IMG/VR virus record: IMGVR_UViG_3300032516_000001
Span: 124,001 to 188,000 of that record
DNA length: 64,000 bases
Strand: one strand, 5' to 3'
Below, piece by piece: positions 6,136 to 40,818 of the stretch. The position numbers and the translations under genes are program-made. The number at the start of each line of letters is the position of its first letter. The stretch's first letter is position 1. The notes beneath the pieces are model-generated. The model was not told where the DNA came from. It searched no databases and saw only the letters and a program-made list of their open reading frames with translations.

Positions 6136-7089
6136 TTATCGATTAGGTTTACTGAATCTGGGATTCTTACTTTGATTGGCAGGATTCTTATTTATTTGAG
6201 GAGGGGATACAGGAGGCTGTCCGGATACTCTCTGATCTAATACTTCATTATTAACAGATGGCAATCCAACCAATGGTTTCTCGGGGGTACTTTGAGGTGC
6301 ATTGTGTTCCAGTATATTAGTTTGAGATGTTTTTCTCTGGGCTATGGCCTGCTCAATAGGACTCATTTTGCTCATATCTGGAACTGGTAGGGAGGTCACC
6401 GGCTCTGGGATAGTCGGTGGAACCTGGTTCTGGATATAGCCTTCCTGGCTTTCCTCGGGCTCAGAAAGGGTTTTAAATGGGTCGAAAGCTACAGAGGTAG
6501 CTTTTGGCTCAAGAGAGGCTTCCGAGCCCGAAGAAGCGGGCTCTTCGGTCTTGTCTCCAGATTCCATAAGCGGGCGTAAATGTAGTTGCTTTCGAAGGTC
6601 GGCCGCCTTCATTTCTAGTTCAACTAGCTCCTCATGGGGATCCTGAGCATTTTCAAATTTAATTTTTGCCTTATTTCCTTTATTGAATGACTCCATCAAG
6701 TCAGCAAAAATATCGAATGTAGTATCCATCCAATCAGTACTCCAATTTGCCATCTTATAATATACATATTTAGATAAATCTACCCTTATCATTTCTCCTG
6801 GTTTTCTGGGATCCGGAACAGTAAATATTTCTCCTTTATCCCGATAAGGTCTCAAATCTATTTCATCTATTCCAACTATCGCATGAGAAAGACTGACCCT
6901 TTTACTTTCCGCTATAAGGAAGGCTCCTGAGACCCCCTCAGTAGTTATTGTCTCAGTGACTTTAAGCTGGGCTGTGTATGAAATAGGGGATAACCATACG
7001 ATTCTCCCACCGACTTCTCTTTTCCAACACTCATCCCTACCAACGTTAGATATTTGTTCGTCTAATTGTGCTAGAAAATCGTTATCCAT
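6136..7089 (-). CDS. Hypothetical protein, probable tail assembly chaperone
   Basis: Between tube and tape measure genes; N-terminal folded region plus Pro/Ser-rich tail; assignment is positional. Confidence 0.5.
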   Translation of the reverse strand: MDNDFLAQLDEQISNVGRDECWKREVGGRIVWLSPISYTAQLKVTETITTEGVSGAFLIAESKRVSLSHAIVGIDEIDLRPYRDKGEIFTVPDPRKPGEMIRVDLSKYVYYKMANWSTDWMDTTFDIFADLMESFNKGNKAKIKFENAQDPHEELVELEMKAADLRKQLHLRPLMESGDKTEEPASSGSEASLEPKATSVAFDPFKTLSEPEESQEGYIQNQVPPTIPEPVTSLPVPDMSKMSPIEQAIAQRKTSQTNILEHNAPQSTPEKPLVGLPSVNNEVLDQRVSGQPPVSPPQINKNPANQSKNPRFSKPNR

Positions 7090-7124
7090 ATATGGATACA
7101 GTACCGAAGTTGTTCATTCCGAAG

Positions 7125-8924
7125 TTATGGACGCCATACCCATCGTTTCTTACCAAGATCCCATATTTTACTGAAACCCTGTTGTGTCCGTAATTCTTCT
7201 TCCGTAGTTAATGATTTTTTCTCGTTTCCTTTTTTCCGAAGGCCCGATTTGTGGTATCTTTTGTTTGCCTTTACCCAATAATAATCTGGAAGTACTTCCC
7301 CATCCAACTTAAATCCAAGTTTATTATATATCCTACCACTAAACAAACGATTATCAGAAAATGACACAATTGACGTTGGGTCATTTTGTTGTATGAAAAG
7401 ACCGAATATTTTCGACCATACACCATGAATTTTATACTCCGAATTAGAAACCATTCTGAGCAATTCCCAGGGATGAATAGATTGACGAGTTGGATACCCA
7501 AAGGAGATTGCGGCTATTATTTTATTATCTAGGAATACTCCATAATGGAGTTTAGCATTACAACTCCCTATGTAATGAAATTCATCATATAATGGTTTAA
7601 CTTCAGAATGTAAAACAGTCCGTATTTTGCATTCTGAAGGGCGGATAGATTGTGCTCCGGAAAGTGATAATCGATTTTTCAATAATTGTTCAACTTTTGT
7701 TCGTTTAAACGTCCATTCATCTTCAAACAAGGAAATGAAATCAAAACCAGCATTAATGGCGTTATTATATTTTTGTAAATCCCGTCGTTTTGCCCCGAGT
7801 CCACTATGCCAACGGAGTCCGTTATACTCAAGTAGAAAATTTTTACTAGGAATATAAATATCATATTTATACTTATCGATAGGGTGTTCCATTATAACTT
7901 CTAAACCGAGGCTTTCAAACCATGATGCTAAGTCCTGCTGAGCCATACTGATATGATTAGAAGCGCACCCGCAGGTAAGCGACGAACCTTTGACTATGTT
8001 ACCCCATATTGGATCATATCTTTCACCACAAGCGCCACATAAAGCTGGGAATGGCTCACAATATTTTTTTACATCTTCGAGTGGCTGAATCCATCCAGAC
8101 GGAATATCATTAACTGAAATCGGGGTCTTAAGGCTTCTTAGTAATTGTTCATTTTCTTTATACCATTTAACAGCTCTTGACTGACATAAACCACATCTGG
8201 TTGTTTTACCAGCGGTAACATCACATATAATGGACTCTAAAATCCCGCCACATTTACACTTCCATTTAACTTTCTTATTTGACCCGGGTGAGATGCTTTG
8301 CGGGTCAGACATTCTAAGTTGGCCAAATTCAGTATTGGTCCAGTATTCTAGGGATTTAACATTACATAATCCACAAGAAGAAGTGTGTCCTGATGTTACT
8401 AGCCAAATCGGTCTAACCGTTGTCTGTCCGCAATCACATTTCCATAACACTTCCGTATGAGAAGATGGATGAGATTCACATGGGTTGGCCATTTTAAGTT
8501 TGCCATATTTAGTAACCCGAAAATGTTCGGCAGATAATATTGAGCACTTTCCGCATGTTTTAGTGTGGCCCGAAGTAACAGAAGTAACTTGGATATCGAC
8601 TTCACGTCCACAATCACAAATCCAAGTGTGTTTTTTCTTGGATTTAGGCAATAAATCTTGTGGAAATTTTAGTCTTAAACTTCCGTATTTAATATTTTCC
8701 CAATAATCAGCGGTTAAAAGTCCGCATTTGCCGCAAGAAACAGTGCCGCCAGATACAACATCACAAACGGAAGCTATAACACTTCTGCCACAATCACAGA
8801 TCCATTCGACTTTGCGATGTGAACCCCGTGATGAGTCCGATGGACTCATCATCCGAAGTTTACCATATTTTATATTCTGAAAGTGATTGGCAGATAAAAA
8901 TGTAGTTGCAATTGTGTCCATCAC
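7125..8924 (-). CDS. Homing-endonuclease-like protein: Zn-ribbon repeats, PD-(D/E)XK nuclease, Hef-like GNAT-type C-terminus
   Basis: Repeated W.C.CG...SCG.C units; YDIYIP..LLEYNGLRWH nuclease motif; WELLRM..SFSDNR..GRIY.KLGF..KIWDLG. Start is GTG 8924 or ATG 8921. Confidence 0.75.
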   Translation of the reverse strand: MMDTIATTFLSANHFQNIKYGKLRMMSPSDSSRGSHRKVEWICDCGRSVIASVCDVVSGGTVSCGKCGLLTADYWENIKYGSLRLKFPQDLLPKSKKKHTWICDCGREVDIQVTSVTSGHTKTCGKCSILSAEHFRVTKYGKLKMANPCESHPSSHTEVLWKCDCGQTTVRPIWLVTSGHTSSCGLCNVKSLEYWTNTEFGQLRMSDPQSISPGSNKKVKWKCKCGGILESIICDVTAGKTTRCGLCQSRAVKWYKENEQLLRSLKTPISVNDIPSGWIQPLEDVKKYCEPFPALCGACGERYDPIWGNIVKGSSLTCGCASNHISMAQQDLASWFESLGLEVIMEHPIDKYKYDIYIPSKNFLLEYNGLRWHSGLGAKRRDLQKYNNAINAGFDFISLFEDEWTFKRTKVEQLLKNRLSLSGAQSIRPSECKIRTVLHSEVKPLYDEFHYIGSCNAKLHYGVFLDNKIIAAISFGYPTRQSIHPWELLRMVSNSEYKIHGVWSKIFGLFIQQNDPTSIVSFSDNRLFSGRIYNKLGFKLDGEVLPDYYWVKANKRYHKSGLRKKGNEKKSLTTEEELRTQQGFSKIWDLGKKRWVWRP

Positions 8925-8957
8925 TACATAATATCACAACGTAGTGATGGACACAAT
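8911..8957 (-). promoter_or_regulatory. Perfect 17-bp inverted repeat with a TG-A-TATTAT (-10) box in its loop and the endonuclease start codon in its 3' arm
   Basis: 8911-8927 ATTGTGTCCATCACTAC is the exact reverse complement of 8941-8957 GTAGTGATGGACACAAT; 13-nt loop. Confidence 0.8.
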
Positions 8958-8964
8958 ATTAAAA

Positions 8965-9654
8965 TCAGCCAAACACGCCTTGGAACAGGGTAGATCCCAT
9001 TCCTGGAAGAAGAATCGGATTATTACCAGCATCAAGTAAATCACCATAATTATCTGGTGACTCACCATACACCGTAGCCCCATCCGTTACATCGGTCACA
9101 GTTGCCGAAGCATCTTCTGCTACAATTGCTGAATCTGACGGGAAACTCGCGCTGATGCTGTTGAGCCAGCAAGCTTGATAAAATGTGATGAGTGCGAGAT
9201 TCCCAGAACCGTCACTAGCCGTTACTGGAGCTCCATAAATCTTAGTATCATTAGCATTCGTCACGAGTTCCGAAAACACTAATTCTGATTTGATATCAAA
9301 TGGCCATTTGTGTTGACGAAGACTTCTTACCAGACCATCAACACCACCACGATAACCAACTTCCTGAGCAATACCAGCGGTGTAGAGCAAAGTGCGGTTC
9401 AGGGTCAGCGTCATCGGCTCAGTGACACTGGGCACGAGTTCCTGAATCTTATCCCCGAAACCAACACCACGCACCGGATCGATTGTACGAGCTTCATTCC
9501 AGTCAAAAGTCGAAAGAACACCTATCTGTCTCTCAACTACTGGATCAGCACCCGGGTAGGGCTTGGAAATAACCCGGTTCTTCTGCGAAATCGCTACGCG
9601 CGTATTTGGTGAAGAACCACGCTGGTAGATGTAATTGTTTGCTGGAGCTGCCAT
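8965..9654 (-). CDS. Tail tube protein
   Basis: QIGVLSTFDWNE.RTIDPVRGVGFGD.IQELVP..TLTLNR..LY pattern resembles myovirus tube proteins; ATG at 9654 preferred over TTG 9675. Confidence 0.7.
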   Translation of the reverse strand: MAAPANNYIYQRGSSPNTRVAISQKNRVISKPYPGADPVVERQIGVLSTFDWNEARTIDPVRGVGFGDKIQELVPSVTEPMTLTLNRTLLYTAGIAQEVGYRGGVDGLVRSLRQHKWPFDIKSELVFSELVTNANDTKIYGAPVTASDGSGNLALITFYQACWLNSISASFPSDSAIVAEDASATVTDVTDGATVYGESPDNYGDLLDAGNNPILLPGMGSTLFQGVFG

Positions 9655-9740
9655 ATTTTCATAAGACACAAACATTCAAAAATTAATTTATATGTAAATC
9701 AATAATATAATAAACTGATTATTTGAGTGTAATTTATCTT

Positions 9741-11345
9741 ATGCCAATTAGAACCAAGGAGGATAAAGAACAAAGAAAAATAATGGAAGCAAACAAAACT
9801 GAAGAGTATAGAATCTTTTATGGTAATAATCAAAACTTAATACAAGAATGCAAATTATGTCACGACAAAAAACCTCTAAATGAATTCGTTTCTAATTATT
9901 CATTCAGATTCAGATGTAAAAAATGTCACCGTACGAAAACATATAGATGGAGAAATGAGAATAAACCAGCCTTCATAGAAATCAGACAACGTAGAGGAAA
10001 AAGATCTGCAGCATTCATCAGATCATTAAAAGAAGGAAAATCTTGTTGTCAATGTGAAAAACCATTTCCTCCGCATGTTTTGGATTTCCATCATTTATTC
10101 GATAAAGAATGGACAATTTCTCAGCTATATGGGAAAAGTCATGATAGAATACTGAAAGAAATAGGAAAATGTCAATTATTATGTGCTAATTGTCATAGAG
10201 ATACGACTCAAAACGAAATTTCTAAGATACCTATTCTAAAAAACAGATATTATGCCTCTGCATTAACTGATACCGAGATTAATATAGGAGATGCAACCAA
10301 GTTATGTATAAAATGTAACAAAACTAAACATATTAATGACTTTACTTTATTAAAGATAGGTAAACGTTTCACATATTGTAGAATGTGCATGAGAGAATAT
10401 AATACTACCCTATCTAAAAACAGAAAAAACAGAGCAGCAAAAGAAACTGTTAGAAATGAAAAAGATATGGCAGTATGCGTAGATTGTGGTAATAAATTTC
10501 ATTATTGGATATTTGACACTGATCATATAGGAGAAGACAAAATTGGAAATATAAATATTCTACAAAACGGATCGATACATGAAGTCAAAGATGAATTGAA
10601 TAAATGCGACATAATTTGTGTTAATTGTCATAGAAAACGAACTTGGCAATGGAGGAAAAATTCAGAACCATGTATATGCGGGTTTAAACCAAGAAGTGCA
10701 TCAGAAAAATCAAAACACATTAAAGATTGTCCGCTCCAAGAAAAACCAATCATAAACGAGTCAGAAGTTGATACCTTCATACAAAAAATAGAATCATTCA
10801 GAACAAATAACTTAGAAGAATCTCATGCAATACTCGATAAATATCATTATGCTAAATTTGGTAGATCAGCCTACGTTGTATATAAAGCATTATATGATAA
10901 TGAAATAGTAGCTATCGTGAAATTCGCTACCCCAGTGAGAAAAGAAGTTGCCACGTCTTTAGGGTGGAATTACTCAGAAGTATTGGAGTTAGATAGATTT
11001 TGTATCCTGCCTAAATTTCAAGTAAAAAATTTAGCGTCTAAAGTTATGGCACAAGTGATAAAGTTAGTAAAATCAGATTTTCCGCATATAGTGTTATTAG
11101 TATCATTTGTCGATCCAGAACAGGGGCATATCGGGACTATATATAAAGCATCCAATTGGACATATATTGGAACTACGGCCAATTCCTATACGTATATAGA
11201 TGAAAAAGGCGACGAAATTAATAAAAAAACCATTTACAACAGAGCAATAAGTAATAACATGAAGGAGAAAGAATATGCAGAGAAAATGAATTTGTCGAAA
11301 GTAAAAATAGGAGTAAAGGATAAATATGGGTACGAACTTAATTGA
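9741..11345 (+). CDS. Double-HNH endonuclease fused to a C-terminal Mom-like (GNAT) domain
   Basis: LDFHH..CANCHR and DTDH..CVNCHRKRT modules, then LDKYHY..KFATPVR..EVLELDRFCI..LVSFVDP.QGH.GTIYKASNW. ATG 9741 follows TAATTT by 5 nt. Confidence 0.75.
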   Translation: MPIRTKEDKEQRKIMEANKTEEYRIFYGNNQNLIQECKLCHDKKPLNEFVSNYSFRFRCKKCHRTKTYRWRNENKPAFIEIRQRRGKRSAAFIRSLKEGKSCCQCEKPFPPHVLDFHHLFDKEWTISQLYGKSHDRILKEIGKCQLLCANCHRDTTQNEISKIPILKNRYYASALTDTEINIGDATKLCIKCNKTKHINDFTLLKIGKRFTYCRMCMREYNTTLSKNRKNRAAKETVRNEKDMAVCVDCGNKFHYWIFDTDHIGEDKIGNINILQNGSIHEVKDELNKCDIICVNCHRKRTWQWRKNSEPCICGFKPRSASEKSKHIKDCPLQEKPIINESEVDTFIQKIESFRTNNLEESHAILDKYHYAKFGRSAYVVYKALYDNEIVAIVKFATPVRKEVATSLGWNYSEVLELDRFCILPKFQVKNLASKVMAQVIKLVKSDFPHIVLLVSFVDPEQGHIGTIYKASNWTYIGTTANSYTYIDEKGDEINKKTIYNRAISNNMKEKEYAEKMNLSKVKIGVKDKYGYELN

Positions 11346-11646
11346 AGTCACGAATAACTATGCCGAACTTCGTAAAAGACAAATATTACGACGACGGTTC
11401 GAAACACGAGAATTCATTATAAGTCTTAAACAACAACCATGTACTGATTGTGGCGGTACATTCCATTACTGTCAAATGGATTTTGTTGCTAAAAATGGCA
11501 ATGAACCATTCAAAATAAGCAATTTTCTCAATAGGTCGAGAAAACGTATAATACTAGAAATTAATAAACGTGATTTGGTTTGCGCGAATTGCGGCAGGCT
11601 TCGAACCTGGAATACGCAACGAGCTAAAAGATCGGGGCCTACTTAA
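11326..11646 (+). CDS. Small single-module HNH protein
   Basis: CTDCG..QMDF..DLVCANCGRLRT; the His positions are degenerate. Confidence 0.6.
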   Translation: MGTNLIEVTNNYAELRKRQILRRRFETREFIISLKQQPCTDCGGTFHYCQMDFVAKNGNEPFKISNFLNRSRKRIILEINKRDLVCANCGRLRTWNTQRAKRSGPT

Positions 11647-11956: not shown

Positions 11957-12024
11957 ATTAAATACCTTTTTCCCCTGGCCACAGATGAAGTAGCCAGGGG
12001 AAATATTGATTCATCAGTATCTGT

Positions 12025-12597
12025 TTATGGTCCAGGACCAGTGGGTCCAGTAGCGCCCGCAGGACCAGTTGCTCCAGTAGCGCCCTCAGGACCAGTGGGT
12101 CCAGTAGCTCCAGTAGCGCCCTCAGGACCAGTGGGTCCAGTTGCTCCAGTAGCGCCCTCAGGACCAGTGGGTCCAGTAGCTCCGGTGACGCCCGCAGCTC
12201 CCTCAGGACCAGTGGGTCCAGTAGCTCCGGTGACGCCCGCAGCTCCCTCAGGACCAGTGGGTCCAGTGACGCCTTGAACACCAGTGGCGCCTTGAACACC
12301 AGTGGCGCCTTGAACACCAGTGGCGCCCTGTGGCCCTGTGGCACCCATCGCTATTACTGTTAGCGCACCAGTATTATATTCAGGATCTCCAGTCCATTTA
12401 TAGATGAGCCCAGTTGTTAACCGCTGAGCTTCAAGACTTGTGAATTGCGCCCCAGTACAAACAGTTAGCTCGCTAGTTATGTCGAAAGCCGGACCACGAG
12501 CCGGCGGAGCGGAACTCTTCGGAATTGTTCGGGCAGGGTGACCGGCAGCCATTGTTATGGCACTACCAACGGTGTTGTACACATAAAGTGGTGGCAT
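12025..12597 (-). CDS. Collagen-like (Gly-X-Y) repeat virion protein
   Basis: C-terminal run of GAT/GVQ/GPT/GPE triplets; tandem DNA repeats at about 12040-12335. Confidence 0.8.
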
Positions 12598-17238: not shown

Positions 17239-17709
17239 ATGAACACCAAAAAATGTATCAAATGTGGAAAAACAAAAAGTATAGAAGAATTTGGTCATTT
17301 TAAAGTAAAAAAGAAATATGACTATGTAAGAAAGATATGTACACGGTGCATGTCAAATGCCAGAATTGTATATAATAAAAACCATCGATTTAAACAAACA
17401 TATCAAAATTGTGTTAAATTCAATAAGTTATTTGGAATAAAATGTGATTTCAGTCCGGAATTCGTAGAAAACATAATTAACCAGCCCTGTGCATATTGTG
17501 ATGATAATGAAGTGAAGATTGGACTGGATCGAATTGATAATGATAAACCATACTCAAAACATAACATTGTTCCATGCTGTATTAGATGTAATTATATAAA
17601 AAGGGATATGCCAACCCGAGCATGGAATATGTTGCATCCTGAAATCAAGAAAATAAGAGAACAAGGATTGTTCGGTAGTTGGTGTCCAAGAGGGTTGAAA
17701 TTAACATGA
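17239..17709 (+). CDS. HNH endonuclease-like protein
   Basis: CAYC..IGLDRIDN.K.Y...NIVPCCIRCN.IK; TGG-TAAAGT lies 5 nt before ATG. Confidence 0.75.
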   Translation: MNTKKCIKCGKTKSIEEFGHFKVKKKYDYVRKICTRCMSNARIVYNKNHRFKQTYQNCVKFNKLFGIKCDFSPEFVENIINQPCAYCDDNEVKIGLDRIDNDKPYSKHNIVPCCIRCNYIKRDMPTRAWNMLHPEIKKIREQGLFGSWCPRGLKLT

Positions 17710-18200
17710 GAATTTGTAGAATTTGTAAAGAAGAAAAATTATTAAATGAATTTTATTCACAAATTATGAAGTTGGCCAGTGGGCCGAAAAGAATGTATAG
17801 AACAGAATGCAAAAAATGCACTGATAAAACCTCAAGGAAATATCATCAAAATCATAGGGACAGAATGATATTGGATAATTCGAGAAGGGAAGACAAGAGG
17901 AATAATTTAAAAACAGAAATTACCAGAGAACAAATTTGTGAATTAATAAATAAACCATGTCATTACTGTGGAGAAACGTGCATTCCGATCGGAATCGATA
18001 GAGTCGACAATAATAAGGGCCACACCAATAATAATATTGTTTCATGTTGTATTAGATGCAATTCACTTAAAAGTGATATGCCAACACAAGCATGGATGAA
18101 GTTAGTACCCACTGTTCGAAGAATTCGAGAACTGGGATTCTTCGAACAGTGGGTTGGTCACAATCTGGGATCTAGAAAATTAGGTATCAGACATCGCTAA
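17706..18200 (+). CDS. HNH endonuclease-like protein, tandem paralog of 17239-17709
   Basis: CHYCG..IGIDRVDNNKGH..NIVSCCIRCN.LK; ATGA overlap with the preceding stop. Confidence 0.75.
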   Translation: MRICRICKEEKLLNEFYSQIMKLASGPKRMYRTECKKCTDKTSRKYHQNHRDRMILDNSRREDKRNNLKTEITREQICELINKPCHYCGETCIPIGIDRVDNNKGHTNNNIVSCCIRCNSLKSDMPTQAWMKLVPTVRRIRELGFFEQWVGHNLGSRKLGIRHR

Positions 18201-23064: not shown

Positions 23065-24396
23065 TTATTCTTGTGCGGCTTTATCTTTGATCCGCTTAAA
23101 AGTTGTAAGAGCTTTCTCTCTAATTTGCATAGTATTATTATCTGCTGGAACGGGTTTTCCCGTACTAGGATCTATTGACAATGCATGAGTTCCGGCCTGC
23201 CTGCGTATTTTAGCCCTTTCTACTCTATCCGCATCATATGCTTCCCATTTTCGATTGGCAGAACGACCAACAGCAATATCTAATGAAGGATTATCGTGTG
23301 AACCAGTACTCCTTCTAGGAATTGGACCAGATTCACCCATATTGTTAAATTTGAAATTTGTGGCAGAAGGTATCCTAGGTACCAACTTCCCACATTTTTT
23401 ACACGGATGTTTTTCGGAATATTGCTTTATATCATCTGATGAGAGCAACAACTCTTCAAACACTATACGACAGTCATTACATTGATATTCAATGATCGGC
23501 AAGGCCACTTCTCCTAATATACTATACTGATGATTTTTGAAGTTTTTTCTATGCCAATACTTCGACATATTCCGCGCATTCGTACAAATTTTGCACTCGA
23601 GAGAATCATTTCTACCTTTATGTTTATGGCGATAACAATCTGCAATGGGGATCAATCCGTGTTTTTTACATAATTTGTGTGTTTCAGTATAAGAAATAGA
23701 TTTGCTTCGGTAATTCGGATCCTGCCACAATATCTTTGCTGCAATAGAATTACTTATTCGTACTTTCTCACGATATTCCGGATTCTGCCACATCTTCAAA
23801 GTCGCATTGTGCATTTTCTCCTTGATTTCGGGTCGAGCAAAAGTTATCTTCTTGGTAGCTGTTGATTTAGCTATGGATTCCGGACTTGGGGGTTTTCCCA
23901 AACGTGCTTTAGCAATAACAACAGACATCTTTTCCCGGTATTCAGGATCTTGCCATAGTTTTTTCATTTCAGCAGATTTTTGTTCTGATGACATAAATAA
24001 ATAGTCTTTAAAATTGTCTAAGGATCGAGGCAGTGCCTTTTCACGATATTCCGGATTATTCCAGGGATTTTTATTTATATGTGGTTTGTGTTCACCACCC
24101 TTAGCCAAATTAAACCCGAACTGCGGATCTCTTGTATTGAAATGATTGATCCACTTCTCTTCAGCTAAATCGGCTGCTTCTAACGTATCGCAAATTTCTA
24201 GAATTCCATGAGTGAATGCGTCTTTCCCATATTTACGAATAGCATTCCAAAAATGGGCACAACCTCTGCCCCGCTTGTGTTTTGCATTCGCTATATGCTG
24301 ATTCCAACGCTTCATCATCGTTAATTTGGTTAACCCGATGTAACGACGTTGTGAATCAATATGTGTATGCGAATAAATCGTCCAGTGAAGTCCCAT
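23065..24396 (-). CDS. GIY-YIG homing endonuclease fused in frame to an FmdB-like Zn-ribbon protein
   Basis: WTIYSH..RRYIGLT..RWNQH..E GIY-YIG pattern; NUMOD-like repeats (KLWQDPEYREK); C-terminal (M)PIIEYQCNDC..FEEL..CKKCG. Confidence 0.75.
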   Translation of the reverse strand: MGLHWTIYSHTHIDSQRRYIGLTKLTMMKRWNQHIANAKHKRGRGCAHFWNAIRKYGKDAFTHGILEICDTLEAADLAEEKWINHFNTRDPQFGFNLAKGGEHKPHINKNPWNNPEYREKALPRSLDNFKDYLFMSSEQKSAEMKKLWQDPEYREKMSVVIAKARLGKPPSPESIAKSTATKKITFARPEIKEKMHNATLKMWQNPEYREKVRISNSIAAKILWQDPNYRSKSISYTETHKLCKKHGLIPIADCYRHKHKGRNDSLECKICTNARNMSKYWHRKNFKNHQYSILGEVALPIIEYQCNDCRIVFEELLLSSDDIKQYSEKHPCKKCGKLVPRIPSATNFKFNNMGESGPIPRRSTGSHDNPSLDIAVGRSANRKWEAYDADRVERAKIRRQAGTHALSIDPSTGKPVPADNNTMQIREKALTTFKRIKDKAAQE

Positions 24397-24416
24397 AAGG
24401 AACTTTACCAGACGAT
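24377..24416 (-). promoter_or_regulatory. 18-bp hairpin containing the -10 box (TAAAGT) and the ATG of the GIY-YIG gene
   Basis: mRNA strand AUCGUCUGGUAAAGUUCC-UUAU-GGGACUUCACUGGACGAU pairs 17 of 18 positions (3 G-U). Confidence 0.75.
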
Positions 24417-24441
24417 CTATTCAACCGATATTCGTAAGCCG

Positions 24442-26038: not shown

Positions 26039-27049
26039 TTAGTCATTAGGCATTTGTGACAACAAAAGAAGGCCAGTGGCTACGGCTGTTATCGGATCTT
26101 TAGCAGGCCTAATATCCGATATTTGAATCGGGAATTTATCTTTATACACATTAAATCTAGATTCAAATTTATCTACGAAACCAGCGGCCAATGAAGTTCC
26201 GCCACTTATGATTATTGGTATGGATTGAGGAACATGGATGGTATCTTTAACTTTAGCAAAATGCTTGATTATATTTTCGATTGAATAATCAATCAGACCT
26301 TGAATAAAAACTGCCAATGCTTCGACTTCACGAGATTTAGGACTGTTTATATCGGCTCCACTTTCTTTGATAGCACACATTTTAGCGGCCGTGGTATTTA
26401 CAGCCTTGGCCGCATGAATATCTATCCAGTCCCCGCCTCTGGTCAAAGAGAATTCAAGCGCATTCATCGCATTATATGATAAACAAATGTTGGTCATACC
26501 GCTTCCGAATGATATCCCAATACCAGAAAAATCTGGTATGCATTCAGAGAATATGATAGCCTGTCCTTCATTGTGAGGAGACGCATCATATCCGTTCTCT
26601 GTAATAATTTTCTTTAAGATAGCAGTATGATATGCATTAGTGGAATCAGGAACATCAATAGCCGGGGCAGGAACAGAGAAACAGCATTTTTCATTCTCAA
26701 TCTGCGGCTTACCAAGAATTTGTTGTAATATTAGAGCTATTACTTGTTGAGCATCAATTTCCCCAGGAGATATCATGCCTTTAGACAAAGGACGACGAGC
26801 TTCTCTATTAAAAAGATTAGCCGTCTCCATCGCTTCATCACCAATAATCAGTAATCTGCCATCAAATTCTACATAACTCTTCTTAGACAGTCTTAAGAGT
26901 CGTTTGTTCTCGAGCGGAAGATCGATAAAAGCGTCCCTAATCCTAATAGTCTTTACATTACCCTTGCTAGTCTCACGGGCAGAAACTATGTTCATCGTGC
27001 CGAGATCCAGCCCAACACCAAAGGTGTCATTTTCCTCAATAGTCATCAT
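26039..27049 (-). CDS. Actin-like ATPase (MreB/ParM/FtsA superfamily)
   Basis: Phosphate-1 GLDLGTMNIV, phosphate-2 GISFGSGMTN, adenosine ISGGTSL, connect-2 PITAVATG; ATG at 27049 overlaps the HNH stop (ATGA). Confidence 0.85.
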   Translation of the reverse strand: MMTIEENDTFGVGLDLGTMNIVSARETSKGNVKTIRIRDAFIDLPLENKRLLRLSKKSYVEFDGRLLIIGDEAMETANLFNREARRPLSKGMISPGEIDAQQVIALILQQILGKPQIENEKCCFSVPAPAIDVPDSTNAYHTAILKKIITENGYDASPHNEGQAIIFSECIPDFSGIGISFGSGMTNICLSYNAMNALEFSLTRGGDWIDIHAAKAVNTTAAKMCAIKESGADINSPKSREVEALAVFIQGLIDYSIENIIKHFAKVKDTIHVPQSIPIIISGGTSLAAGFVDKFESRFNVYKDKFPIQISDIRPAKDPITAVATGLLLLSQMPND

Positions 27050-27942
27050 GCGGCCTTTCGACGTTCTACTGTGCGACTTACGTGACACCAACAGCATACG
27101 ACTTCGCATTTATTCAACTCCACCATAATTCTGGACAAACTAGCCTGACTACCAATTAGATTAGAAACATTATCAAGTTTTTCATCAATGTGATCCAGAT
27201 CCATTTGCCACGGATTGAACATGTTACCACAATCGATACATGGTTTACTTTTATACTGTCTTACTAAATCTAATCGTCTAGCTCGAAATCTAGCTAAACC
27301 AGCATAATGAATACATTTTTTACACCCCGGTTTATATACTGGTCTGTGCTCCTTACATGACGTTACATATTCAGATAGTCTATCATGTGATCTATTCCTA
27401 TGACATCCAACACAAACCAAATCACATTTTTCTAATTCATTTTTCAATTTTTCAAGACTAGCAGTTGGATGATTAACTAATCTATATATATCATATATCT
27501 TATCAGTACGATGATCAAATGTCATAGCTTCTTTCTGATATACATGACCACAATCAATACAAGGATTTGATTTTATTAAAGAAACATATGCACGTTTGGC
27601 TTCCCGACAAGAAGATCTTTTTATAGAAAGTTTTTCGGCATTGGTAGCTCTGTAATTAGAATTATATAAACTTCTACACCTCTTACACATTCCCTTATTG
27701 AATTCAGTAATGTGTTTTTCTTGATTACACAAACTACATTTCTTATGATTGATATCACACCCATGCTTTAATTCATGGATTTCTATTCGTTTTTGTTCCC
27801 TTAACCCTAAGATATCACGTGATTTCCAACTATTGCAATTACATCTATGACGTTTTAAAGTCGATAGTGAACTCGCAACATAACCGCATATACACATTAA
27901 ACCAATCATATTATTTATCCTTAATTTCTTATCTTGTATCAA
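27046..27942 (-). CDS. Double-HNH homing-endonuclease-like protein
   Basis: CIDCG..MTFDH..KCDLVCVGCHR and CIDCG..MDLDH..KCEVVCCWCH. Confidence 0.78.
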   Translation of the reverse strand: MIQDKKLRINNMIGLMCICGYVASSLSTLKRHRCNCNSWKSRDILGLREQKRIEIHELKHGCDINHKKCSLCNQEKHITEFNKGMCKRCRSLYNSNYRATNAEKLSIKRSSCREAKRAYVSLIKSNPCIDCGHVYQKEAMTFDHRTDKIYDIYRLVNHPTASLEKLKNELEKCDLVCVGCHRNRSHDRLSEYVTSCKEHRPVYKPGCKKCIHYAGLARFRARRLDLVRQYKSKPCIDCGNMFNPWQMDLDHIDEKLDNVSNLIGSQASLSRIMVELNKCEVVCCWCHVSRTVERRKAA

Positions 27943-39243: not shown

Positions 39244-40818
39244 CTAAAATCGATAAATATATTTGATCTTAGCCGGAATTGCAATCTTGGTCAAACCAAG
39301 CTTATCAACGTACTCACGTTCTTTTAATTTCAAATTACAAGCCTTATCATAAACAGATTTTTTGTTTATTTCATTTCCATCTTTATCAACGTAAACATAA
39401 CTAGAAGTAGTTTGACCAACTTCTTCCCAATTACTTGCTTTATATATGGTACCAACATGTCCAAATCGTGGATCGGCAAACGAAACAAGACATTTAATTT
39501 CGGGAAAAGCGCTAGACACCTTCTTAATAACTCTAGACATGAGATAAGAAGCAAAATTCTTCTTATGATAACTGGGATCAATACAGAATCTGTCTAATTC
39601 CAAGACTTCGCCATGATTTAAATCAAGTGTATGCGCTATACCTTGTCTAACAGGAGTAGCGAATTTAATAACAGCAACAACTAGTTCTTGAATTTTGGCA
39701 ACAAATATAACTTTAGATGCTCGGCCAAATCCAGCATAATGATACTTATCCAAAAATTCGGTAACATCTGGAGAATGGAGTACTTGGGAAATAACTATAG
39801 AATCAAAAGAAAAATCGATAACATCAATATTTGATCTGTTATGATAACAAACCCCATTTCCAATATACTTACTATAATTACAATTCCAGCACAAAAGCTG
39901 ATATTTTGACATTAACGATGGCTTTTTAACTAATTTTTTGTAAAGATCGATTCCAGATCCTTCACCTATCTTTCTACATGCTGAACCATCATTGTATTTA
40001 TGATCCAAAGTTAACTTATAAAGATCCTTCTCTCCACAACATACGCATTTTCCACCCAATAATGTTAAACAACTCTGTCTGAATTTATCAGTTATTATTC
40101 TACGGCAAGGCAGACATCTATTACTGCCATGAGACAACTGTGATGGGAATTCGTTAACGTCTTTTTCTTTTAAACAAATATTACAAATTTTGGTTATACC
40201 TGATGAAATAACTACTTTTAACTGATGTATTGGGTTAATTCTATATTTCTTATTATTACAATTGTGGCACAATACCTGATAACGTGTTTTATCTGACTCA
40301 CCGTTTAAAATCCTACGTTTCCAACCAAGACTGCCAAAACTACGTTCAGTATTACCATCGTTATTTACATGATCTATTGTCAGAAACTCTTTAATATCTA
40401 AACCGCATGTAACGCATTTTTGACCCAATAAATCAAGAACTTGATTAATAATTGACTGTCTGTACACTCTATGACTTTCAACTACATGTTCAGCGTTATC
40501 ATCAGTCCATTTTTTTATTCTTACCCTAATCTTATCAAGATTTTTCAATCTGTATTCTGATTTATTCTTTAGTATTGCTGCACGATTTTCTTTATAATAT
40601 TCATGTTTATCATTCAAAATTTGATCATGATTATCAGCATACCATTTCTTCCTGATAACTTTTAACTTTTCACTATTTTCTATTTCATATATTTTATTAT
40701 GTTTCTTTCTACATTCCTTACACTTTGAGTCTTTCCCGTTTTTCTTAATTGTGTTATTAAAATACTCAGAAAGCAATTTTTCAACACCACATTTAACACA
40801 AATTTGTGTTGCATCCAT
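39244..40818 (-). CDS. Double-HNH endonuclease fused to a C-terminal Mom-like (GNAT) domain
   Basis: C..CG..LTIDHVNNDG..CHNCN and C.CCG..LTLDH.YNDG..CWNCN; then LDKYHY..KFATPVR..EVLELDRFCI..SFADP..GH.GTIYKASNW. Confidence 0.78.
   Translation of the reverse strand: MDATQICVKCGVEKLLSEYFNNTIKKNGKDSKCKECRKKHNKIYEIENSEKLKVIRKKWYADNHDQILNDKHEYYKENRAAILKNKSEYRLKNLDKIRVRIKKWTDDNAEHVVESHRVYRQSIINQVLDLLGQKCVTCGLDIKEFLTIDHVNNDGNTERSFGSLGWKRRILNGESDKTRYQVLCHNCNNKKYRINPIHQLKVVISSGITKICNICLKEKDVNEFPSQLSHGSNRCLPCRRIITDKFRQSCLTLLGGKCVCCGEKDLYKLTLDHKYNDGSACRKIGEGSGIDLYKKLVKKPSLMSKYQLLCWNCNYSKYIGNGVCYHNRSNIDVIDFSFDSIVISQVLHSPDVTEFLDKYHYAGFGRASKVIFVAKIQELVVAVIKFATPVRQGIAHTLDLNHGEVLELDRFCIDPSYHKKNFASYLMSRVIKKVSSAFPEIKCLVSFADPRFGHVGTIYKASNWEEVGQTTSSYVYVDKDGNEINKKSVYDKACNLKLKEREYVDKLGLTKIAIPAKIKYIYRF

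What the first reader, a model, noticed from the sequence alone, without database searches (positions are those of the whole stretch)
8911..8957. Promoter-in-hairpin switch gating a homing endonuclease inside the tail operon
Seen: a perfect 17-bp inverted repeat between the tail tube stop and the endonuclease gene. The 13-nt loop holds an extended -10 box (TG-A-TATTAT), and the 3' arm holds GTG/ATG and the first codons, with no Shine-Dalgarno sequence. Established: T-even homing endonuclease genes such as I-TevI and mobE are silenced on read-through transcripts by hairpins that occlude translation initiation and are released by an internal promoter. Inference: abundant operon mRNA folds and hides the start codon, while transcription from the loop yields a leaderless mRNA lacking the 5' arm. 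This would be a leaderless version of the T4 logic. A DNA cruciform could also modulate the promoter.
Basis: partly seen in the sequence, partly recalled or inferred. Interest (0 to 1): 0.72.

Follow-up and report, generated by a model that had tools for sequence, protein, structure and literature searches.

The report
Hairpin-gated leaderless start of a homing endonuclease
A conserved RNA hairpin in an uncultivated sediment jumbo phage carries a promoter-like box at its tip and buries the start codon of a selfish endonuclease gene, so the gene is probably silent on read-through tail-gene transcripts and translated only from its own short, leaderless transcript, as in phage T4 but without a ribosome-binding site.

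Summary
There is a perfect 17-bp inverted repeat at 8911-8927/8941-8957 with a 13-nt spacer. On the minus (coding) strand the spacer reads TG-A-TATTAT. The 3' arm holds GTG (8924) and ATG (8921), which are the only possible starts of a 599-aa Hef-like homing endonuclease gene (HEG). No Shine-Dalgarno sequence is present.

New evidence favours a functional mRNA structure. Five homologous HEGs (55-62% identical) carry the same architecture with different arm sequences. 14 of the 17 positions paired in the window show compensatory double changes. Cognate arms pair far better than swapped ones. Sense-strand folds beat antisense folds through G·U pairs.

A TG(n)TAnnnT box lies 3-9 nt (mostly 5-6) before the start codon in 11 of 14 family members, with or without the hairpin. 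The same spacing is enriched genome-wide.

Homologs without the start hairpin have a GC-rich terminator-like hairpin after the tail-tube-like gene instead. An unrelated GIY-YIG HEG family in the same genome has an analogous covarying hairpin.

The T4-like occlusion and internal-promoter logic, in a leaderless version, is therefore the best reading. No start site or translation data exist and no RNA run was listed. The cruciform idea is disfavoured. I rate it a new variant of a known kind.

The parts
8965..9675 (-). Upstream 236-aa virion protein, tail-tube-like. The true start is probably Met8 at 9654. The TGA stop is at 8967-8965.
   Evidence: It is 36% identical to the Tunturiibacter phage Tunturi_5 'virion structural protein'. 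It has no Pfam, PHROG or PDB sequence hit. The ESM Atlas features and structure lead point to tail-tube families Phi812_tail_tube, Phage_tube_2 and T4 gp19. Alignment A1 places the homologs' Met at residue 8. The AF2 model was unusable, with pLDDT 30.
8941..8957 (-). 5' arm of the hairpin. It is non-coding and contains a -35-like TTGTGT at 8956-8951.
   Evidence: A TTG(T/C)GT hexamer at 17-18 nt spacing from the -10-like hexamer also occurs in L098, L099 and L100 (read from the sequences shown).
8928..8940 (-). Loop or apex holding an extended -10-like box. TG is at 8936-8935 and TATTAT at 8933-8928, ending 6 nt before ATG 8921.
   Evidence: The TG(n)TAnnnT box is conserved 3-9 nt (mostly 5-6) upstream of the start in 11 of 14 family members. 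Hexamers matching TATAAT at 5 of 6 positions or better, ending 5-6 nt before start codons, occur in 14 ORFs against about 2.5 expected.
8911..8927 (-). 3' arm, made of the spacer GTA, GTG (8924-8922), ATG (8921-8919) and codons 2-4 of the endonuclease gene. The predicted transcription start is about 8921.
   Evidence: The pairing probability of the start codon is 1.00. Public gene calls give a 598-aa product, which corresponds to ATG 8921.
7125..8924 (-). Hef-like free-standing homing endonuclease gene. It has four DUF4379 treble-clef Zn-finger repeats, a Vsr/REase_MTES_1575-like nuclease domain and a Mom/GNAT-like C-terminal domain. It is inserted between the tube-like gene and the 317-aa gene.
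   Evidence: Pfam hits. PHROG 559 and 3339, annotated 'HNH/homing endonuclease', at E 2e-68 and 2e-58. Campylobacter phage 'Hef-like homing endonuclease' hits. Most relatives have the two flanking genes adjacent.
7087..7105 (-). The downstream 317-aa gene's own conserved GGTACTGT box (7105-7098), lying 8 nt before its ATG (7089-7087).
   Evidence: The GGTA(T/C)nGT box is conserved upstream of this gene in relatives, at variable distance from the ATG.

Best explanation
The hairpin is a conserved structure of the mRNA-sense RNA that gates expression of a free-standing Hef-like homing endonuclease gene.

Transcripts that read through from the upstream tail-tube-like gene carry both arms, because no terminator intervenes. 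They fold into a 19-bp stem that buries the only possible start codons, so the endonuclease is not translated from the abundant structural message.

A sigma-70-type promoter lies across the hairpin. TTGTGT is in the 5' arm and TG-n-TATTAT is in the loop. It should start transcription at or next to the A of ATG 8921. That transcript lacks the 5' arm and is leaderless, or nearly so, so the start codon is free.

Basis of each step:
- Shown by sequence and comparison: the anatomy, conservation of the structure with compensatory changes, the sense-strand preference, and the conserved box and its spacing.
- Inferred only: the start site, leaderless translation, read-through, and timing.
For: Anatomy and stability of the hairpin are established.

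Covariation:
- Homologs L098, L099, L100, L101 and L105 (55-62% aa identity) keep the hairpin with different sequences. Their fold z-scores run from -4.2 to -8.6, and the start codon is paired in all.
- 14 of the 17 positions paired in the window show at least one compensatory double change.
- Cognate arm duplexes average -29.0 kcal/mol against -17.1 for swapped arms.
- Sense folds are 2-14 kcal/mol more stable than antisense folds, with 1-5 G·U pairs in each.

Promoter:
- A TG(n)TAnnnT box lies 3-9 nt (mostly 5-6) before the start in 11 of 14 family members, including those without a hairpin.
- The same spacing is enriched genome-wide, 14 observed against about 2.5 expected.
- A related box is conserved upstream of the 317-aa gene in relatives, at variable distance from its ATG.

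Insulation logic:
- Homologs without the start hairpin (L102, L103, L104, L106) carry a GC-rich terminator-like hairpin right after the tube-like gene.

Recurrence:
- The three most structured start regions among all 216 ORFs of the genome are HEGs.
- The GIY-YIG HEG family has an analogous covarying hairpin with its ATG at the apex.

Precedent:
- The T4 and Aeh1 endonuclease hairpins work this way (PMC2988022).
Against: - There are no RNA data. No RNA run was listed, so the start site, read-through and translation are all untested.
- In L098 the ATG is only 3 nt from the hexamer. L099 and L100 start with GTG or TTG, which are poor leaderless starts in E. coli.
- An internal AUG without a Shine-Dalgarno sequence might be poorly translated even without a hairpin, so occlusion may not be the selected function.
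- The same kind of hairpin occurs at an ordinary gene's start in L011.
- Hairpin-less family members show that it is dispensable.
- The phage encodes a sigma-70-like protein, so the promoter class and its timing are unknown.
Confidence: 0.6

Rival explanations
1. The hairpin is mainly the 3'-end element of the tail-tube-like gene's mRNA. It would act as a terminator or attenuator, an RNase III site, or a stabiliser against 3' exonucleases. On this view it overlaps the next gene's start only because the junction is compact, and silencing of the endonuclease is a by-product.
For: HEG-less relatives have a strong hairpin at exactly this junction. In L011 that hairpin (21 bp) includes the next gene's -10-like box and ATG. 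Family members without the start hairpin have a GC-rich terminator-like hairpin instead, giving a complementary distribution. A perfect 19-bp dsRNA stem is a plausible RNase III substrate (general knowledge).
Against: No T-run follows the stem in the window or in any of the five homologs, and the terminator scan lists nothing here. The hairpin always pairs the start codon itself. The GIY-YIG family hairpin, which sits behind a different upstream gene, does the same. No RNase III gene was found in the 57%-complete record, although a host enzyme remains possible.
Confidence: 0.2
2. The feature acts at the DNA level. The palindrome would be either an operator for a dimeric regulator, possibly the endonuclease itself as in I-TevI autorepression, or a cruciform that modulates the promoter.
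For: The palindrome brackets the promoter-like box. I-TevI represses its own late promoter through an operator (PMC2988022).
Against: The arm sequences are not conserved while their complementarity is. The strand asymmetry from G·U pairs would appear as C·A mismatches on the other strand of a cruciform. A 13-nt spacer disfavours extrusion (general knowledge).
Confidence: 0.05
3. The hairpin only represses and there is no internal promoter. The TG-TAnnnT box would have another role, and the endonuclease would be made at a low level when ribosomes terminating 7 nt upstream, or thermal breathing, open the stem.
For: The upstream stop codon lies 7 nt before the stem, so a terminating ribosome would melt its outer pairs. 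No start site has been mapped.
Against: The box and its spacing are conserved even in hairpin-less homologs with intergenic regions of 124-170 nt. The distance from the upstream stop to the hairpin varies between homologs.
Confidence: 0.1
4. It is a neutral or recent palindrome produced by template switching, with no function.
For: The arms are perfect, and no variation was seen among four samples.
Against: The structure is retained across homologs that are 55-62% identical, with many compensatory changes.
Confidence: 0.03

Closest known systems
T-even phage hairpin and late-promoter control of homing endonuclease translation (I-TevI, I-TevII, I-TevIII, segB, Aeh1 mobE)
   Same: A stable hairpin sequesters the translation-initiation region on transcripts that come from upstream genes. 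A promoter sits inside or just after the 5' arm, so its own transcripts cannot form the stem. The regulated gene is a homing endonuclease embedded in a same-strand operon (PMC2988022).
   Different: Here there is no Shine-Dalgarno sequence. The start codon itself is what is buried, and the promoter-to-ATG spacing predicts a leaderless mRNA. The promoter box is sigma-70-like with an extended -10, not the T4 late TATAAATA. The endonuclease family is different (Hef-like, with Zn-ribbon, Vsr-like and Mom-like domains). The phage lineage is an unrelated uncultivated jumbo phage. Nothing has been tested experimentally.
PeSLs (promoter-early stem-loops) of T4-type phages
   Same: Both are composite stem-loop-plus-promoter cassettes lying between genes in plastic regions (PMC2839356, PMC4122927).
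   Different: PeSLs are described as repeated, sequence-conserved terminator/promoter motifs that mediate recombination. This arm sequence is unique in its genome, the promoter box is inside the loop, and the stem includes the start codon.
Intrinsic terminator followed by a promoter after a highly expressed structural gene
   Same: It sits in the same position as the GC-rich hairpins that follow the tube-like gene in relatives.
   Different: It has no U-tract, its stem is AT-rich and 17-19 bp long, and it overlaps the next gene's promoter box and start codon.

Membership tests
T4-type hairpin/internal-promoter translational control of HEGs | The regulated ORF is a homing endonuclease gene on the same strand as upstream genes. 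| tested here: met
   PHROG and Pfam hits. It is an insertion relative to most relatives. The upstream gene is on the same strand.
T4-type hairpin/internal-promoter translational control of HEGs | A stable RNA hairpin sequesters the translation-initiation region. | tested here: met
   This is met by prediction and covariation only. The fold z-score is -7, the start-codon pairing probability is 1.0, and compensatory changes occur in five homologs.
T4-type hairpin/internal-promoter translational control of HEGs | A Shine-Dalgarno sequence is the sequestered element. | tested here: not met
   There is no SD-like motif within 20 nt upstream. The start codon itself is buried.
T4-type hairpin/internal-promoter translational control of HEGs | A promoter is placed so that its transcripts lack the 5' arm, with a mapped start. 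| tested here: inconclusive
   A conserved TG(n)TAnnnT box sits at the apex, 6 nt from the ATG. No start site is mapped, and no RNA run was listed.
T4-type hairpin/internal-promoter translational control of HEGs | There is a temporal switch between promoter classes, with early or middle read-through and a late internal promoter. | not testable with these tools
   The only hints are a second conserved motif (GTTTAT) upstream of the tube-like gene and a phage sigma-70-like ORF.
PeSL (promoter-early stem-loop) cassettes | The same stem-loop/promoter sequence is repeated at many intergenic sites of the genome. | tested here: not met
   The arm sequence occurs only at this site in 241,648 bp, allowing up to 2 mismatches.
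Intrinsic (Rho-independent) terminator | A GC-rich stem is followed directly by a U-tract. | tested here: not met
   The terminator scan finds none here. The stem is followed by TGCAACTACA before any T-run. The homologs likewise lack one.
Leaderless mRNA | The transcript's 5' end lies at or within a few nt of the start codon. | not testable with these tools
   It is predicted from the 5-6 nt spacing between the -10 box and the ATG. L098 (3 nt) and the GTG starts in L099 and L100 fit less well.

The most novel reading that the evidence does not exclude
In this clade of uncultivated sediment jumbo phages, hairpins that embed a leaderless promoter and bury the start codon may be a general, independently evolved device for insulating genes from strong structural-gene read-through. 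The genes concerned are chiefly two unrelated families of homing endonucleases (Hef-like and GIY-YIG). This would be the first described case where transcript identity, meaning a 5'-terminal AUG versus an internal and base-paired AUG, is the whole switch, with no ribosome-binding site involved.
Probability: 0.45. Interest if true: 0.7.

Novelty: new variant of a known kind. Interest (0 to 1): 0.6.

Why it matters
Homing endonucleases must be expressed without harming their host genome. T4 solved this with RBS-sequestering hairpins and late promoters.

Finding the same logic, supported by covariation, in an unrelated jumbo-phage lineage argues for convergent evolution of endonuclease silencing. 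It occurs here in two endonuclease families, and in a form with no ribosome-binding site.

It also gives a clean natural model for how leaderless and internal AUGs are told apart. It supplies a promoter and spacing rule that would improve start-codon calling and promoter annotation in these uncultivated phages. Several public gene calls in this family start at downstream ATGs, for example in L100.

Tried and rejected
- RNA evidence: no RNA run was listed for the tube gene plus hairpin.
- Population variation: contigs from four samples are identical in the hairpin, so covariation within the population cannot be tested.
- Homologs in IMG/VR: the matches to the endonuclease in the related loci (about 40% identity) lack the hairpin. 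A metagenome-contig scan returned only the source contig. The useful homologs came from the protein database instead.
- Alignment: the MAFFT/RNAalifold alignment A2 misregistered the start codons and one sequence. I therefore counted pairs from each sequence's own fold, anchored on the start codon.
- Structure of the 236-aa protein: the AF2 model was unusable at pLDDT 30, so no fold search was run. A PDB sequence search found nothing.
- Rfam: the only match was a sub-threshold miRNA-precursor hit on the hairpin, which I take as chance.
- Megablast against the phage collection found no match.
- A first, strict TGnTAnnnT genome scan understated the promoter class. A plain -10 hexamer spacing histogram showed it.
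- Rejected readings: PeSL membership (sequence unique in the genome), intrinsic terminator (no T-run), cruciform or operator (strand asymmetry, arms not conserved in sequence), and chance.

Full report
**What is there**

The window is bases 124001-188000 of a 241,648-bp IMG/VR virus record. The record is estimated 57% complete and comes from sediment metagenomes, so it is a jumbo phage.

The inverted repeat is exactly as described. Arms are 8911-8927 and 8941-8957, 17 nt, perfect, with a 13-nt spacer.

All relevant genes are on the minus strand, in this order:
- A 236-aa gene ends with TGA at 8967-8965.
- Seven nt later the 5' arm begins (8957-8941).
- The loop (8940-8928) reads GTTGTGATATTAT. 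This is TG-A-TATTAT, an extended -10.
- The 3' arm (8927-8911) reads GTA GTG ATG GAC ACA AT.

An in-frame TGA five codons upstream, and the first Zn-finger repeat beginning at residue 9, leave only GTG 8924 or ATG 8921 as possible starts. Public gene calls give 598 aa, which corresponds to the ATG. A -35-like TTGTGT lies in the 5' arm with a 17-nt spacer. No Shine-Dalgarno-like motif lies upstream.

As RNA the stem is 19 bp, and the surrounding 111 nt fold with z = -7.1. The arm sequence is unique in the genome. Perfect repeats of 14 nt or more number only seven in the whole genome. Contigs from four separate samples carry the stretch with no change in the hairpin.

**The genes**

The 599-aa protein is a Hef-like homing endonuclease. 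It has DUF4379 treble-clef Zn-ribbon repeats, a REase_MTES_1575/Vsr-like nuclease domain and a Mom/GNAT-like C-terminal domain. It matches PHROG 559 and 3339 at E 2e-68 and 2e-58, and it resembles the Campylobacter phage 'Hef-like homing endonucleases'.

The upstream 236-aa protein has no Pfam, PHROG or PDB sequence match. It is 36% identical to a Tunturi_5 'virion structural protein'. The ESM Atlas links it by features and by a neighbour's structure to tail-tube families. The AF2 model was unusable, so 'tail tube' is a reasonable lead and not a result.

The downstream genes are a 317-aa gene, a 395-aa gene and a 1236-aa protein with a weak tape-measure match.

In 17 related viral contigs the tube-like gene is 65-74% identical. 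In most of them the 317-aa gene follows it directly, so the endonuclease gene is an insertion. The junction is an insertion hot spot, with GIY-YIG genes in L003 and L014 and a truncated Hef-like remnant in L004.

**Is the hairpin functional?**

Closer homologs of the endonuclease (53-62% identity) were found in the protein database, and their contigs were fetched. Most are syntenic, in the order tube-like gene, endonuclease, 317-aa-like gene.

Five of them (L098, L099, L100, L101, L105; 55-62% identity) have the same architecture. Each has a non-coding 5' arm, a TG(n)TAnnnT box at the apex, and a 3' arm made of the spacer, the start codon and codons 2-5. Their arm sequences differ. Fold z-scores run from -4.2 to -8.6.

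I anchored each sequence on its start codon and counted pairs:
- 14 of the 17 positions paired in the window show at least one homolog that keeps the pair through changes on both sides.
- Cognate 5'/3' arm duplexes average -29.0 kcal/mol, against -17.1 for swapped arms.
- Sense-strand folds are 2-14 kcal/mol more stable than antisense folds, because 1-5 G·U pairs occur in each sense fold.

The non-coding arm therefore tracks the coding arm, and the structure is selected on the mRNA-sense strand. This argues against chance, against a sequence-specific palindromic operator, and against a cruciform.

**Is there a promoter at the apex?**

Across 14 family members, 11 have a TG(n)TAnnnT box ending 3-9 nt before the start codon, mostly at 5-6 nt. 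These include members without any hairpin and with intergenic regions of 124-170 nt.

Genome-wide, hexamers matching TATAAT at 5 of 6 positions or better end 5-6 nt before the most-upstream start codon in 14 of 216 ORFs. About 2.5 are expected from internal in-frame start codons.

A related box, GGTA(T/C)nGT preceded by T/C-G, is conserved upstream of the 317-aa gene in relatives at variable distance from its ATG (5 to about 30 nt). That is how a promoter element behaves, not a ribosome-binding site. The window's own 317-aa gene keeps one at 7105-7098.

With the usual 7-nt distance from a -10 hexamer, the start falls on the A of ATG 8921. That would give a leaderless mRNA lacking the 5' arm.

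Caveats:
- In L098 the ATG is only 3 nt from the hexamer.
- L099 and L100 have GTG or TTG starts.
- Only about 28% of ORFs in this genome have a Shine-Dalgarno motif, so its absence is not remarkable in itself.
- The record encodes a sigma-70-like ORF and no RNAP beta-like gene in the part available. Promoter class and timing are therefore open.

**Context that bears on mechanism**

Family members without the start hairpin (L102, L103, L104, L106) have a strong GC-rich terminator-like hairpin right after the tube-like gene, followed by a long spacer. HEG-less relatives have the same, followed by the 317-aa gene's box. None of the six start hairpins is followed by a T-run, and the terminator scan lists nothing at this site.

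Two alternative solutions therefore insulate the gene after the tube-like gene. One is a terminator followed by a promoter. The other is a hairpin that contains the promoter and buries the start.

In L011 the second solution is used for the ordinary 317-aa gene. There a 21-bp perfect stem has the -10-like box at its apex and ATGGAC in its 3' arm. The device is therefore not strictly endonuclease-specific.

It is, however, enriched at endonuclease genes in this genome:
- About 20 endonuclease genes occupy roughly 9% of the genome.
- The three most structured start regions of all 216 ORFs belong to the Hef-like gene and to two GIY-YIG genes that share one 5' end (z -6.3 to -6.8; endonuclease genes versus others, Mann-Whitney p = 0.0036).
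- The GIY-YIG hairpin has its TGGTAnnGT box in the 5' arm, its ATG at the apex and codons 2-8 in the 3' arm. It recurs with compensatory changes in relatives that are 41-44% identical.

**Comparison with what is known**

The review by Edgell, Gibb and Belfort confirms the T4 logic. A stable structure sequesters the RBS on early and middle transcripts, and a late promoter is placed so that late transcripts cannot form it. This applies to I-TevI, I-TevII, I-TevIII, segB and Aeh1 mobE (PMC2988022).

The present case works like that system but differs in four respects. It has no RBS and the AUG itself is buried. It has a leaderless geometry. Its promoter box is sigma-70-like. It involves a different endonuclease family and a different phage lineage.

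PeSLs (PMC2839356, PMC4122927) are repeated terminator/promoter cassettes, whereas this sequence is unique in its genome. A text search for leaderless, homing endonuclease, phage and hairpin together returned three papers, and the only one opened did not describe this arrangement.

**Verdict**

Structure, conservation and promoter geometry are now well supported by comparison. The transcription start, leaderless translation, read-through and timing remain inferred. The cruciform suggestion is disfavoured.

The main rival is that the stem is chiefly a 3'-end or processing element of the tube-gene mRNA. That reading is compatible with, and may coexist with, occlusion of the start codon.

I rate the finding a new variant of a known kind, with interest 0.6.

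Noticed in passing
window 24370-24423 (minus strand); also G000:C1 about 214328-214381: The GIY-YIG homing endonuclease gene at 23065-24396 has an imperfect 24-bp hairpin. TGGTAAAGT sits in its 5' arm, the ATG is at the apex and codons 2-8 form the 3' arm. A second GIY-YIG gene outside the window has an identical 5' end. Relatives (L014, L026-L029) keep the hairpin through compensatory changes.
   Followed up: partly
L011:4690-4745: This relative has no endonuclease gene at the junction. A 21-bp perfect hairpin follows the tube-like gene, with TGGTATCGT at its apex and the ATGGAC start of the 317-aa-like gene in its 3' arm. This is the same design at an ordinary gene.
   Followed up: partly
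window 18107-18154: An 18-bp perfect inverted repeat with a 12-nt loop lies inside the 3' part of a 173-aa HNH endonuclease ORF (17679-18200, plus strand). Four of the seven perfect repeats of 14 bp or more in the genome lie in endonuclease genes. The other two, besides this one and the finding itself, are at genome 29582-29626 in a GIY-YIG gene and at 84440-84473 in a 589-aa Hef/Mom-like paralog, just after a perfect TGTTATAAT.
   Followed up: partly
whole record; in the window e.g. 362-1156, 7125-8924, 9723-11345, 11326-11646, 17239-18200, 23065-24396, 27046-27942, 39244-40818: Homing endonuclease genes are unusually dense, at about 20 in 241 kb. They comprise 8 GIY-YIG genes, 5 with a Mom-like domain, and about 8 HNH-only genes.
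   Followed up: partly
window 9700-9715 (minus strand) and the equivalent position in L004-L018: A conserved GTTTAT(T/G) motif lies about 28-50 nt upstream of the tube-like gene in the window and in its relatives. It may be a second, possibly late, promoter class. Most relatives also have a clear Shine-Dalgarno sequence there, but the window does not.
   Followed up: no
window 9654-9675: The tube-like ORF probably starts at Met8 (ATG 9654), not at the most upstream ATG 9675, judging by alignment with 11 homologs.
   Followed up: partly
G000:C1:47991-48629 (minus strand; outside the window): A 212-aa ORF has a borderline Sigma70_r2 match (23-24 bits). It is flanked by two long perfect inverted repeats at genome 47014-47056 and 48959-49017.
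   Followed up: no
window 11958-12597: Overlapping ORFs here contain highly repetitive sequence. Relatives L015 and L016 give dozens of staggered tblastn matches to the 190-aa ORF, so this is probably a collagen-like or other tandem-repeat structural gene.
   Followed up: no
L100:1366-1500: The public gene call for this homolog starts at a downstream ATG. The family N-terminus and the hairpin and box indicate a GTG start about 90 nt upstream. Start-calling errors are likely for this promoter class.
   Followed up: partly
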